From: Chrysemys picta bellii
Taxonomy: Eukaryota
Reading direction: 5' to 3'
Length of the DNA stretch: 64,000 nt
Assembly (NCBI RefSeq): GCF_011386835.1
Contig: NC_088812.1
Coordinates: forward strand, 17,918,001-17,982,000
Both the position numbers and the translations under genes were made by a program. The notes under the pieces are model-generated. The model did not search any database. It was given only the letters and a program-made list of their open reading frames with translations, and was not told the DNA's origin. Within the stretch, counting starts at the first letter, position 1; each line of letters starts with the position of its first letter. Shown here one piece after another: positions 1 to 46,171 of the stretch.

Positions 1-142
1 TCACTTCTTCAGATGCATCTGAAGAAGTGAGGTTCTTACCCACGAAAGCTTATGCTCCCAATACTTCTGTTAGTCTCAAAGGTGCCACAGGACCCTATGT
101 TGCTTTTTACAGATTCAGACTAACACGGCTACCCCTCTGATA
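1..142 (+). mobile_element. PLE-derived short element, copy A (left part off-window), inverted-dimer type
   Basis: Bases 1-30 are a perfect palindrome (tcacttcttcagatg|catctgaagaagtga); the tail to ...gactaacacggctacccctctgata differs from 44510-44636 at only 2 positions. Confidence 0.85.
15..55 (+). ncRNA. Minimal type-I hammerhead ribozyme motif, copy A
   Basis: GCAT CTGAAGA A GTGAGGT-TCTT-ACCCAC GAAA GCTT ATGC: helix I GCAU/AUGC, core CUGANGA, helix II with a bulged A, GAAA, palindromic AGCU, NUH = CUU. Confidence 0.75.
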
Positions 143-787
143 TAGATAGATAGATAGATCCCGCCCGCCCTCATGGAACTCAATTGCAAAGAATTGCAAA
201 GCTCCCAATGACCTGAGTGGTGGAGGATCAGAGGGTGTCCAATTCCCCTAGTTTCTAAACAAAAGCACAAAGACAAATTCCACACACATAAGCATCAATT
301 GGGGGGCGCTACTGTGTGTATGTTTCCTCTTTTAAGCGCGTGGGGTGACAGAATCTGTGTTGAGGAAGCTACAGGGAAAGGCAAGGAAGATTCGACCCAG
401 GCAAGGTGAAATTGCTCACCTAAACCACGTCAACTGACCCTAGATCCTGCAAACAGGAGTCTGCGGCCCAAGGACAAGCCGGTTCTCAGCGGGGCTCCGG
501 ACAGGCGAGTTAGCAATCTCTCTGGGTATCTGTCCCGGCTATAAACTCCCCCCGGGTAGCCACCAGGCTAGAGTTCGTCTTATCTGTGGTGCCGTGGTGG
601 GTGGGACTCTCCTTCCGCACGAATGCAGAAGTATTGGAGAAAATATAGGGCCACGTTGTCCCAGCCTACCTCCCCACTGAAACCAACGAGGGTCTGAGCC
701 AACTCTGTAGTTCACTGGAAAGTCTCCCAATAACTTCCTGTTAGTAATAGTTAGTAACCTAGCCCCTGTCATGGACCAGGACCAGGT

Positions 788-828
788 TCATAGAATCATA
801 GAATATCAGGGTTGGAAGGGACCTCAGG
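788..828 (-). mobile_element. CR1/SINE 3'-tail fragment
   Basis: tcatagaatcatagaatatcagggttggaagggacctcagg. Confidence 0.7.
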
Positions 829-1614
829 TTGTGCTAGGCCTCTGTCAGTTGGGGCTGGAAAGCTAGATAATTAACCTTGCAAATTTTCCATGATGAGGGC
901 CTGAGTCATTGTTTAATTTATTATTGTTTGCTTATCAAAACGGGGAAAGGGAAATTTGGGGAACATCTTTTTTTTTTTCAAATGGGCAAAATGTGATAAT
1001 GCTTAATAAAGAATGGAAACTGTCTTTTGCTATCAAATTATGCTCGCATTAGGCAATTCTTATTGGTATTGCATCATCAGCCAATGCTTACTCTGGTAAA
1101 GAGGGATCTACACAGTTTGTGGCCTGATGGGAGAATTTGGCAATCAGATGTAGCAACCTGAATAATTTTTTGAGATTATTCAGTTAGGGCTTATATTCAC
1201 ATCCCTTACTCCTCCAAGGGTGTCTTACTCACAGAAGCAGCTTCATTAGCGTTCGTGGTAGAGCTGGTTGGGGAAAAGATTTTGTTTGGATGAAAAAAGC
1301 TATGTGAGTGAAGTGCTTATATAGTAGTAGGAGTAGTGGTAGTGGTAGTAGTAATGAATATAGACAACCTGAGCTTCTACTGAAAGTGAAGGGCTGGCAA
1401 AAACAACTCTTTTGCAACCCAGTCTTTAGTCTTCTTTTGGTCTTTTGTTGCTCAGACTGGATGATCTTGGCCCCCACTGAAGACAGTCTGAGCTTTGACA
1501 TGGGCTTCAATTAATACCAAGGATTGGTTAAGTGAAGCTGCAAGGTTTCATTCCAGTGTTTATGGCTGCTGATATACAATGTACAATATACAATCCTTTA
1601 TGCAACACATACAG

Positions 1615-1925
1615 CAGGAGCAGGCAACCTATGGCACGCGTGCGGAAGGCAGCACGTGAGTTGATTTTCAGTGGCACTCACACTGCCCGGGTCCTGGCCA
1701 CCGGTCCGGGGGGCTCTGCATTTTAATTTAATTTTAGATGAAGTTTCTTAAACATTTTAAAACCCTTATTTACTTTACATAGAACAATAGTTTAGTTATA
1801 TATTATAGACTTATAGAAAGAGACCTTCTAAAAACATTAAAATGCATGACTGGCACAGGACACCTTAAATCAGAGTGAATAAATGAAGACTCGGCACACC
1901 ACTTCTGAAAGGTTGCCGACCACTG
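1615..1925. mobile_element. hAT (Buster/Charlie-type) non-autonomous element, 311 bp
   Basis: 8-bp TSD acatacag (1607-1614, 1926-1933; TA at positions 4-5); TIRs caggagcaggcaacct / aggttgccgaccactg. Confidence 0.88.
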
Positions 1926-43722: not shown

Positions 43723-43961
43723 GTGCTCCGTGGTACCCGATGCATACAAGGTCCCGGAAAAAGCGAAAACCCTATTCCAAGCTTCAGCTAGCAGAGCTGG
43801 AAGGGGAGTTTATGGTCAACGAATTCATTACCCGCCAAAGAAGGAGGGAGCTCTCAGACCGATTAAACCTGAGTGATCAGCAGGTGAAGATCTGGTTCCA
43901 GAACCGACGCATGAAAAAGAAAAGACTGCTTCTGAGGGAGCAAGCTCTTTCTTTCTTTTAA
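43723..43961 (+). CDS. HOXC12: Homeobox protein Hox-C12, exon 2 (homeodomain); spliced protein 267 aa (279 aa if the acceptor at 43687 is used)
   Basis: ccttag acceptor 43721-43722; (G)[78 protein letters not shown]; TAA 43959-43961. Confidence 0.96.
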
Positions 43962-44424
43962 AGTTCAAAAAGCGTCCACGTCGGTTAACCTCATAGACTC
44001 TCTAGTGTTCATCCGAGCTGGTGGTTCCGGGACTTGACCTGATCACTCATCATTTTCTTAAAAAAAAAAAAAAATCAGCGAGCATATATAACTATGAGAA
44101 TATGCATCTCCTACACTGGAACTGTTGGGAAAGACCCGATGTGAATGCGCAACTCCCTAACCCACCCGTCAGCCAGCGTTGGTTTCTATGGTCTAAAAGA
44201 TTGTCAGCAGCATTGAGTGTAATCTGAGTGTGATGTTGAGTACGACCCACTATCCTTTCATTGACAAGCCGAACAGGTATGGTTTGGTTTCCCTCCAAGC
44301 AATAAGGTTTGTTGGGCTGTGTGCGATATTTCTCCCCGCCCCCAGACTGCTCTGGCTTTGTTGTTGGTCCCTATTCCAGACGGCATCAAAGATCAGTCTT
44401 GGAACCAAGTCACTGTCCTATACG

Positions 44425-44635
44425 AAGCAACAGAGGGTCCTGTGGCACCTTTGAGACTAACAGAAGTACTGGGAGCATAAGCTTTCGTGGGTCAGAACCT
44501 CACTTCTTGCATCTGAAGAAGTGAGGTTCTTACCCACGAAAGCTTATGCTCCCAGTACTTCTGTTAGTCTCAAAGGTGCCACAGGACCCTCTGTTGCTTT
44601 TTACAGATTCAGACTAACACGGCTACCCCTCTGAT
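44425..44635 (+). mobile_element. PLE-derived inverted element, copy F, 13-bp TSD, downstream of the HOXC12 stop
   Basis: TSD actgtcctatacg at 44412-44424 and 44636-44648; 84-bp inverted arms 44425-44508 / 44516-44599 with 1 mismatch. Confidence 0.9.
44509..44549 (+). ncRNA. Minimal type-I hammerhead ribozyme motif, copy F, sense to HOXC12; predicted cleavage 44545/44546
   Basis: GCAT CTGAAGA A GTGAGGT-TCTT-ACCCAC GAAA GCTT ATGC, identical to copy A. Confidence 0.75.
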
Positions 44636-46171
44636 ACTGTCCTATACGGTAACGTAGGTTTTAGTGCCGGGTGTTCATTCTCTGGAGTGGTATGGCTCCT
44701 TCATTCAGCTCCCGCCCATTCTTAGGGTGAACGGTTCGCCAGTGGTACATATTTCCAGACCCATTTTCATTACAAGTCGAGGGTTCCCGGCGAACAAAAT
44801 AACGGGATTGGTCAGTAGCTATAGGAAGAAGAATGTATAGCAATGTGTAGCAGGTTGTCCCTGAGCTAGGAACTTAGCTCCGATACCTGGCGCTTCTTGC
44901 ATGGTGCTTTGCTCAAAATAAATGGGATGGTATTAAAATGAGTCCAGGCCCCGCACTCACGCACCCAGCCACAAGCTCCACCGAAAATCCTTCGACGCAA
45001 AATGGAATTTACTTCCAAATTAAACTGAGCCTTTCAGAGATTCCCTCTGAAACCAAAACCAAGTGCGTTTTCTGCACTGGCCCCGATTGTATTCTTATTA
45101 GCTGCTACTTCAAGTCATTTTGTGTGCTTAAACACAACTCCGCTGCAGGAGTATTTGTGCCATTTTACTGTGTTTATTGATGGCGGCACAGAAAAGAAAA
45201 TACCCTTTTGTGGCGTTCACCCATGGCGTCAAACTACAAATATACTTTCTTCCTAGAGCTGTCTTTAAACATTAACTTCATCGCTTGGTTTTTATTTTAG
45301 AAAGGAAAGAGCAGGTTTTGATTTTTTATTTTTTTTTAGGATGACTTCTAGTCAAGTAGACAGAAAAACACAAAAATCAATGGCCGCTTTCCCTCGGAAC
45401 CAGACTAGTGACACATTCAATTTTCCATCACCCGCAGTTCTTCCTTAACTCAGACGCTCTCCACATTTATGGGGGTGCGGTCCTTTTATTTAGGAAAAAT
45501 GTGGGGGAGACCCGGTCATTTCCCCCTTCCCCACACCGTTCATACCCCATAGGCCTACTGCGCTCCTCCTTCACAGAGGGGCTGGCTGAATATTGTGTGT
45601 GTTTTTTTCCTGTAGGTGTGTTCCGATTTACTGCAGAAAAATAATAATTGGCTTAATCATAATGTGTGCATTCCACCAGCCTTGTACAGCGTCCCCAGCT
45701 TTCTTGGAAAGAAATGTAGCTGCAGCGCTGGGCAGATATTTCCTACCCTTCTGCCCGCAAAGCAATATTTAGAGGGGGTGGTGGACATCAGTTACCAGGG
45801 TTAAGATAAAAGGGGACGTTGTAGCTTAGATTTTTGCCACTACAAGCTTTGCTTCATTCGTTTTATATAGGATGGATTAATTTTATTACAAAGCAACGTT
45901 CTCTGGGAAGCCTAAATTATTACCACGTGCTGCCGGTTCTCTGCGTTCATGGTCATGACCGAACAGTAGTGGCAAAGAATGCTTTTATTTACGAGCTGCA
46001 AAGGACGTATTCTAGTCCTTAAAAATGCCCCCCGGTTTGAAAGCTGGCCTTTTCTTCAGCTCTATTTCCCATGTCTGTGCCAAAAACATCCAGGAGTGCC
46101 TACCCCTCCACTCACCTCCACCTCACTGTCCCCCGCATGTCACCCCCCCCCCCTTTTTTTTTTAAATTAAA

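What the first reader, a model, noticed from the sequence alone, without database searches (positions are those of the whole stretch)
1..44648. A dispersed family of non-coding, TSD-flanked, hammerhead-bearing PLE-derived elements in and around the HoxC cluster
Seen: six related copies (1-142, 5115-5255, 10364-10564, 21778-21987, 39769-39815, 44425-44635) share the tail TGTTAGTCT..AAGGTGCCAC. Five retain the motif GCAT-C(T/C)GANGA-A-stemII-GAAA-G(C/T)T-H-ATGC, and stem II changes while staying paired (GTGGG/CCCAC with different loops; GTGAGGT/ACCCAC). Four copies have exact 12-13 bp TSDs, and none has coding sequence. Established: Penelope-like elements carry minimal hammerheads in their terminal repeats, and such motifs with a short palindromic helix III are thought to act as dimers. 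Inference: these 50-210 bp units are products of PLE machinery, either extreme truncations or a retrozyme-like non-autonomous class, and at least one subfamily was recently active.
Basis: partly seen in the sequence, partly recalled or inferred. Interest (0 to 1): 0.85.

Follow-up and report, generated by a model that had tools for sequence, protein, structure and literature searches.

The report
Truncated Penelope retrotransposon ends with hammerheads
Six short repeats around the HoxC13-HoxC12 genes are real, but they are ordinary truncated and folded-back insertions of the hammerhead-bearing end of a Penelope-like retrotransposon, a pattern already published for reptiles, and not a new class of element.

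Summary
There are six loci and no more in 64 kb. Five carry a complete minimal type-I hammerhead motif. Four have exact 12-13 bp target-site duplications (TSDs). None touches an assembly gap.

The anatomy matches published Penelope-like element (PLE) insertions: a shared 3' end, variable 5' truncation, an adjacent inverted 5'-truncated copy, and an optional 32-35 nt "tail" on one end only.

Contigs from four other organisms each place 10,000-20,000 pieces on copy c6. They show the same two alternative 3' ends. One organism has the exact empty site of c6 and another holds its 3' junction, so that subfamily was active recently.

Between subfamilies, substitutions avoid the hammerhead's constrained positions (3 of 34 columns vary, against 26 of 48 downstream). 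There is no compensatory change at all, so the covariation claim fails in this window. Three of five cores read CCGA, not CUGA.

No copy is in tandem, so the retrozyme-like reading gains no support here. I could not settle it, because no autonomous PLE of the host could be fetched. Cleavage and RNA ends are also untested.

This scan's first readers left 111 notes on Penelope and hammerheads elsewhere in this genome. Verdict: already known, low interest.

The parts
1..142 (+). c1: fold-back copy cut by the window start. Forward arm holds the hammerhead (15-55, CTGAAGA core), the conserved box (68-88) and the tail (about 110-142). It abuts (TAGA)n at 143-160.
   Evidence: 98% identical to the c6 forward arm over 129 nt (D12)
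5114..5258 (+). c2: single-arm copy. About 50 nt of leader, hammerhead 5165-5204 (CCGAAGA core), box 5216-5236, and a tail-less 3' end TTTTTAAA. Decayed TSD at 5101-5113 and 5259-5271 (11 of 13).
10351..10577 (+). c3: fold-back copy with TSDs. Inverted arm 10364-10452 carries the complete hammerhead on the minus strand (10451-10412, CCGACGA) and no tail. Forward arm 10453-10564 starts inside loop II and carries the tail. TSD TGACTCCCTTAAA at 10351-10363 and 10565-10577.
   Evidence: I4; arms 69/70 identical
21766..21999 (-). c4: fold-back copy on the minus strand. Long arm 21933-21778 has about 43 nt of leader, the hammerhead (21891-21852, CCGATGA), the box and the tail. Short inverted arm 21934-21987 ends at TTTTTA. 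TSD ATTAACTTCTAT at 21766-21777 and 21988-21999.
   Evidence: arms 42/44 identical plus a 9-nt indel
39756..39828 (+). c5: 47-nt insertion (39769-39815) holding only the box and the tail-less 3' end. TSD CAGAGTGTTTTAA at 39756-39768 and 39816-39828.
44412..44648 (+). c6: fold-back copy about 470 nt after the Hox-C12 stop codon. Inverted arm 44425-44508 has no tail. Forward arm 44509-44638 has the hammerhead (44509-44549, CTGAAGA), the box (44562-44582), the internal 3' end at 44605, and the tail 44606-44638. TSD ACTGTCCTATACG at 44412-44424 and 44636-44648.
   Evidence: I1; arms 83/84 identical; empty site 44411|44636 in organism E and the 3' junction present in organism B

Best explanation
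The six loci are dead, non-coding insertions of the 3'-terminal region of a Penelope-like retrotransposon, made by its reverse transcriptase/endonuclease through target-primed reverse transcription.

Shown here:
- All copies share the 3' region: hammerhead, about 56 nt containing the conserved box, then one of two alternative 3' ends 32-33 nt apart. These are the internal end at TTTTTACA and the tail end at ...CTCTGATACT.
- The 5' end is variable.
- Each insertion is flanked by a 12-13 bp duplication.
- Three copies have a second, inverted 5'-truncated arm made in the same event. It always lacks the tail.

Inferred:
- The two 3' ends are the two internal reverse-transcription start sites shown for the Anolis Poseidon element.
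- Fold-backs arise because the enzyme nicks and extends both DNA strands. One strand is primed at the tail site and the other at the internal site.
- The minimal type-I hammerhead (helix I GCAU/AUGC, 6-bp helix II with an extra unpaired A before it, palindromic AGCU in place of helix III) is kept by selection in the master copies and decays neutrally after insertion.
- In a fold-back copy any transcript would form an 84-bp hairpin, not a ribozyme.
For: - Family is real and limited to six loci.
- Arms of one copy are 98.6-98.8% identical, while different copies are about 79% identical, so both arms date from the insertion.
- The tail is present on one arm only in c3, c4 and c6.
- Contigs of four other organisms show loose ends at 44637/44638 (232-290 contigs per run) and at 44605 (59-63 contigs in three runs) with random flanks. 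These are family-wide alternative 3' ends.
- Exact TSDs, and the precise empty site of c6 with one TSD copy in organism E.
- The hammerhead folds as predicted on its own.
- Between four independent lineages, 3 of 34 constrained hammerhead columns vary. By contrast 5 of 6 free columns and 26 of 48 downstream columns vary (Fisher p = 5e-4 and 2e-5). N7, the one free core position, is A, C or U.
- Literature: minimal hammerheads in PLE terminal repeats, mostly dispersed as single truncated motifs, sometimes paired on opposite strands, and found in turtle and snakes (PMC4209133). High 5' truncation, an adjacent inverted truncated copy, and a 30-40 bp tail at one end (PMC8557442). Two internal RT start sites that define the tail, and extension of both strands (PMC11167929).
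Against: - No autonomous PLE (RT plus GIY-YIG ORF) of this host could be fetched, so the link to a coding master is by architecture only.
- Three of five hammerheads have C at the normally invariant U4.
- There is no compensatory base change.
- Rfam gives no hammerhead hit.
- c2 and the long arm of c4 begin within about 5 nt of the same point upstream of the hammerhead. Random truncation does not predict this.
- No RNA data could be laid, so cleavage and expression are untested.
Confidence: 0.8

Rival explanations
1. The copies belong to a discrete short non-autonomous element of about 145-180 nt (leader, hammerhead, box, optional tail). It would be transcribed from a terminal-repeat promoter or from tandem or circular retrozyme units, and mobilised in trans by PLE enzymes. 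The six loci would then be solo monomers of a non-LTR retrozyme family, not truncations of a coding element.
For: - c2 and the c4 long arm start at the same YTCTCTGT point, 45-50 nt upstream of the hammerhead. Their leaders align better than 99% of shuffles.
- The family is very abundant (10,000-20,000 contig pieces per run).
- A 2026 preprint reports non-LTR retrozymes in 4 of 5 reptiles with a mean unit of 176 bp, many dispersed monomers, and a PLE terminal-repeat origin (10.64898/2026.07.22.740005).
- One unchecked first-reader note mentions an exact tandem pair elsewhere in this genome.
Against: - No head-to-tail copy occurs in the window.
- Sequence following the tail end in other genomic copies is random, not the leader (loose ends at 44637/44638, agreement 0.36-0.40).
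- 5' ends in the window are otherwise variable: the hammerhead edge, loop II, and downstream of the hammerhead.
- Unchecked first-reader notes report copies in this genome with a GIY-YIG frame directly followed by the hammerhead.
Confidence: 0.15
2. The fold-back copies are miniature inverted-repeat DNA transposons (terminal inverted repeats plus TSD), or hairpin microRNA-like genes.
For: c3 and c6 have 70-84 bp near-perfect inverted arms and a TSD. Weak sub-threshold Rfam hits to microRNA hairpin models appear.
Against: - The ends are asymmetric, with the tail on one side only.
- Single-arm copies c2 and c5 share the same 3' ends and have their own TSDs.
- A 47-nt 3'-end fragment with a 13-bp TSD fits reverse transcription from the 3' end, not cut-and-paste.
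- The Rfam hits lie far below gathering scores and match several unrelated families on both strands, as any long hairpin would.
Confidence: 0.02

Closest known systems
5'-truncated and fold-back insertions of endonuclease-positive Penelope-like elements (Penelope/Poseidon, Neptune clades), as described by Evgen'ev & Arkhipova and by Craig et al. 2021
   Same: Common 3' end with heavy 5' truncation. Adjacent inverted 5'-truncated copy. A 30-40 bp tail at one end only. Variable TSD. Hammerhead in the terminal repeat.
   Different: No coding master was seen here. All six copies are extremely short (47-214 nt).
Minimal type-I hammerheads of metazoan PLEs (Cervera & de la Pena 2014, PMC4209133)
   Same: Short helix I (4 bp). 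Long helix II (6 bp). [quoted passage not shown] G10.1-C11.1 pair. Palindromic 15.2-16.2 (AGCU). No helix III hairpin. Mostly dispersed single motifs, some paired on opposite strands. Reported in turtle and snakes.
   Different: Three of five copies read CCGA in place of CUGA, a variant their CUGA-based descriptor would have missed. One subfamily has a bulged A in helix II.
Poseidon element of Anolis carolinensis (Frangieh et al. 2024, PMC11167929)
   Same: Two adjacent internal reverse-transcription start sites that explain the optional tail. They lie 85-92 nt after the hammerhead cut site in Anolis, and 56 and 88-89 nt after it here. The start region is an AC-rich stem-loop. Both DNA strands are extended.
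   Different: In Anolis the ORF starts inside the hammerhead. Here no frame with a start codon runs through the 3' end. Nothing was tested biochemically for this family.
Non-LTR retrozymes of animals (tandem hammerhead repeats that give circular RNAs)
   Same: Type-I hammerhead of PLE type, non-coding, and a similar unit size in reptiles (about 176 bp in the 2026 preprint).
   Different: Retrozymes are defined by head-to-tail arrays with a hammerhead in each unit. None of the six loci is in tandem.

Membership tests
Penelope-like element insertion | Hammerhead motif in the terminal repeat | tested here: met
   Five complete motifs; they fold into helices I and II
Penelope-like element insertion | Shared 3' end with variable 5' truncation | tested here: met
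   Alignment of nine arms; family-wide 3' ends in four other genomes
Penelope-like element insertion | Adjacent inverted 5'-truncated copy made in the same event | tested here: met
   c3, c4, c6 and the cut c1. Arms are 95.5-98.8% identical, against about 79% between copies
Penelope-like element insertion | Optional 30-40 bp tail at one end | tested here: met
   A 32-35 nt tail on one arm only. It is absent in c2 and c5. Two loose-end peaks at 44605 and 44637/8
Penelope-like element insertion | Target-site duplication; insertion confirmed by an empty site | tested here: met
   Exact 12-13 bp TSDs in four copies; empty site of c6 in organism E
Penelope-like element insertion | Autonomous relative with RT and GIY-YIG ORF carrying the same terminal sequence | not testable with these tools
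   No such ORF in the window. The host genome is not searchable. Only unchecked first-reader notes bear on it
Hammerhead ribozyme (type I, minimal) | Invariant core C3 U4 G5 A6 N7 G8 A9 ... G12 A13 A14 | tested here: inconclusive
   All core positions are kept except U4. U4 is C in c2, c3 and c4, and U in c1 and c6
Hammerhead ribozyme (type I, minimal) | Helices I and II supported by covariation | tested here: not met
   100% of cells are paired, but there are 0 compensatory changes and 9 of 10 pairs never vary. Only 4 independent lineages are available.
Hammerhead ribozyme (type I, minimal) | Match to a curated Rfam hammerhead model | tested here: not met
   No hit at gathering score in the window and none at E up to 10 around c6. 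From my own knowledge, the Rfam models include a helix III hairpin that these motifs lack.
Hammerhead ribozyme (type I, minimal) | Self-cleavage after H17 | not testable with these tools
   No raw RNA reads were available
Non-LTR retrozyme | Head-to-tail tandem units, each with a hammerhead | tested here: not met
   No tandem array contains the family
Miniature inverted-repeat DNA transposon | Symmetric terminal inverted repeats at both ends of every copy | tested here: not met
   The tail makes the ends asymmetric, and c2 and c5 have a single arm

The most novel reading that the evidence does not exclude
A short template containing only the terminal repeat (starting 45-50 nt upstream of the hammerhead and ending at the internal or tail start site, about 145-180 nt) may be a discrete non-autonomous parasite of the PLE machinery. 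In addition, masters with C at core position 4 were mobile as recently as canonical ones. That would mean hammerhead catalysis is dispensable for PLE mobility in vivo, or that the protein-assisted dimeric ribozyme tolerates U4C.
Probability: 0.15. Interest if true: 0.45.

Novelty: already known. Interest (0 to 1): 0.2.

Why it matters
The finding adds little to what is published. It gives a clean in-genome illustration of the two-start-site and two-strand model of PLE integration: in all three complete fold-backs the tail sits on exactly one arm. It also shows a PLE subfamily that was active recently enough to differ between closely related taxa, inside a posterior Hox cluster and about 470 nt after the Hox-C12 stop codon. 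The only points that might interest a ribozyme or transposon specialist are the recently mobile C4-core variant and the possible discrete 5' end upstream of the hammerhead.

Tried and rejected
- Rfam at gathering score found nothing. The permissive scan of c6 gave only sub-threshold microRNA hairpin hits caused by the fold-back.
- A metagenome scan for the 21-nt box gave two chance hits in microbial coding DNA.
- Runs holding c6: none is on record as RNA, and all are kept as contigs. Expression, RNA ends at the cleavage site and circular RNAs could not be examined.
- Attempts to reach an autonomous PLE of the host all failed. The window has no RT or GIY-YIG ORF. Bird Hox-C12 loci (L003-L012) and squamate loci (L013-L019) hold no copy of the family and no minimal hammerhead. 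The one RT ORF found (L013:19925-22159) is Ty3/gypsy-like, not PLE.
- The bird loci did not align to the flanks of c6, so they say nothing about its age.
- The host species could not be named, because run organisms are coded.
- Lunse et al. 2017 (PMC5785218) is not held, and the supplement of the 2014 paper is not held.
- The search of earlier findings by sequence and by place returned nothing.
- The loose ends at 44506-44508 (hammerhead 5' edge) were rejected as evidence of a family-wide 5' end, because c6's own arm junction lies there.
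Full report
**What is there**

The 21-nt box TGTTAGTCTNNAAGGTGCCAC occurs nine times at six loci, against 0.03 expected. blastn with every copy as query and a profile search without filters (nhmmer --max) return these six loci and nothing else in the 64 kb.

A scan for C[TC]GANGA...GAAA with flanking GCAT/ATGC finds five complete motifs: 15-55(+), 5165-5204(+), 44509-44549(+), 10451-10412(-) and 21891-21852(-).

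Exact direct repeats flank four copies: 13 bp at c3, 12 bp at c4, 13 bp at c5 and 13 bp at c6. c2 has a decayed 13-bp duplication matching at 11 of 13 positions, read directly.

The three N runs (18122-18269, 36294-36465, 53418-53570) are at least 3.3 kb from any copy. I did not test continuity across them, and it does not matter for this finding.

**Context**

The window holds, all on the + strand:
- a Hox13 first exon (Pfam HoxA13_N) and its homeobox exon;
- Hox-C12, whose best named matches are all Hox-C12;
- a Hox11 first exon (DUF3528).

c1 to c4 lie upstream of Hox13, and c5 lies between Hox13 and Hox12. c6 lies about 470 nt after the Hox-C12 stop codon. That it sits in the 3' UTR is an inference.

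**Anatomy**

Oriented by the hammerhead strand, every copy is a 3'-anchored piece of one unit:
- in c2 and c4 only, a leader of 43-50 nt;
- a 40-41 nt hammerhead;
- about 56 nt containing the box;
- an internal end at TTTTTACA;
- optionally, 32-35 more nt (the tail) ending ...CTCTGATACT.

c2 and c5 stop at the internal end. c1, c3, c4 and c6 carry the tail.

c3, c4 and c6 are fold-backs: an inverted, 5'-truncated arm is joined head-to-head to the forward arm. c1 is one too, but the window start cuts it. The arms of one copy are nearly identical: 69/70 in c3, 83/84 in c6, and 42/44 plus a 9-nt indel in c4. Different copies are only about 79% identical. Both arms were therefore made in the same insertion event.

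In all three complete fold-backs the tail is on one arm only. The other arm ends at, or within 6 nt of, the internal end.

**Evidence from other genomes**

I laid contigs of four DNA runs from four other organism labels on 44100-44950. Each run placed 10,000-20,000 contig pieces on the element at 90% identity or more, so the family is very abundant.

Loose ends with random continuation pile up at two places:
- 44637/44638: 232-290 contigs per run;
- 44605: 59-63 contigs in three of the runs.

These two 3' ends are therefore a property of the whole family.

One 953-nt contig of organism E joins 44411 directly to 44636, with flanks about 99% identical to the window. This is the exact empty site, with a single copy of the 13-bp TSD. 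A contig of organism B runs from inside the tail (44614) to 44950 without any difference, so B has the insertion. c6 is thus a bona fide and evolutionarily recent insertion.

The variant table lists C for T at 44514 (core position 4) at 11-16% of summed depth. It also lists the CpG at C11.1/G12 (44537/44538) decayed at 3-19% per site. This is what neutral decay after insertion looks like.

**The hammerhead**

Each 40-41 nt motif folds on its own into helix I (GCAU/AUGC) and a 6-bp helix II. It has the traits listed for metazoan PLE minimal hammerheads:
- an extra unpaired A after A9;
- a G10.1-C11.1 pair;
- palindromic AGCU in place of a helix III hairpin;
- H17 = U or C.

Among four independent lineages, only 3 of 34 constrained columns vary: U4, one closing pair, and position 16.2. 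By contrast 5 of 6 free columns vary (N7, loop II, the bulge, H17), as do 26 of 48 downstream columns (Fisher p = 5e-4 and 2e-5). This argues for selection on the motif in the master copies.

On the aligned motifs all cells pair, but 9 of 10 pairs never vary, one varies on one side only, and none shows a compensatory change.

Three of five cores read CCGA. c3's arms differ at only 1 of 70 positions, so a C4 master was mobile about as recently as the U4 master of c6.

A transcript through a fold-back copy would form an 84-bp hairpin of -170 kcal/mol, against -9.6 kcal/mol for the ribozyme fold. Fold-back copies are therefore not ribozymes in place.

A conserved 9-bp stem (UGUUAGUCU with AGACUAACA) joins the box to the tail and encloses the internal end. 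It is invariant, so covariation cannot support it.

**What it is**

Every feature is already described for PLE insertions:
- Cervera and de la Pena 2014 (PMC4209133) reported minimal hammerheads in PLE terminal repeats. These are massively dispersed, mostly as single motifs "probably related to truncated PLEs", and sometimes as pairs on opposite strands. They are conserved in "turtle and snakes".
- Craig et al. 2021 (PMC8557442) describe high 5' truncation, an inverted 5'-truncated copy next to the insertion, and a 30-40 bp tail often present at one end only.
- Frangieh et al. 2024 (PMC11167929) showed for the Anolis Poseidon element that reverse transcription starts at two adjacent internal sites whose spacing is the tail. 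They also showed that both DNA strands are cut and extended, and that hammerhead mutants still insert in vitro.

The geometry here is close to the Anolis case. The ends lie 56 and 88-89 nt after the predicted cut site, against 85-92 nt in Anolis.

My reading is that these are ordinary truncated and fold-back PLE insertions. The fold-backs are explained, by inference, by priming of the two strands at the two start sites.

**What remains open**

I could not fetch an autonomous PLE of the host:
- the window has none;
- the metagenome scan gave chance hits;
- bird and squamate Hox-C12 loci hold no copy;
- the one RT ORF met is Ty3/gypsy-like.

Membership therefore rests on architecture.

The retrozyme-like alternative is weakened by three observations. 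There is no tandem copy. The sequence after the tail in other genomic copies is random. Unchecked first-reader notes report GIY-YIG frames directly followed by the hammerhead in this genome.

It is not excluded, for two reasons. c2 and the long arm of c4 start within about 5 nt of the same point. A 2026 preprint also reports tandem retrozymes of about 176 bp, with many monomers, in reptiles.

No RNA data could be used.

**Verdict**

First readers of this scan noted it 111 times elsewhere in the same genome.

Noticed in passing
window 44412-44648: The youngest fold-back (c6) sits about 470 nt after the Hox-C12 stop codon and is absent at the orthologous site of one closely related organism. If it lies in the 3' UTR, it would add an 84-bp perfect hairpin to the transcript.
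   Followed up: partly
window 14920-15275 (related units at 13414-13528): Tandem array of a 72-nt unit (5 copies, 71% matches), upstream of Hox13. Unrelated to the Penelope family.
   Followed up: no
window 8064-8963: C-rich region with an 83-nt repeat (8228-8754), inside a 299-aa ATG-started ORF that has no Pfam match.
   Followed up: partly
window 143-160: A (TAGA)n microsatellite directly abuts the 3' end of c1. An insertion bias of PLEs for microsatellites has been reported for other PLE clades (PMC8557442).
   Followed up: no
window 53418-53570: A third run of N that the finding's note does not list.
   Followed up: no
L013:19925-22159: Long open frame with an RT domain, closest to Ty3/gypsy reverse transcriptases, about 8 kb downstream of a snake Hox-C12 gene.
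   Followed up: partly
window 44514, 10446, 5170, 21886: Hammerhead core position 4 is U in the c1/c6 subfamily and C in the c2, c3 and c4 lineages. C also makes up 11-16% of contig depth at this position in four other genomes.
   Followed up: partly
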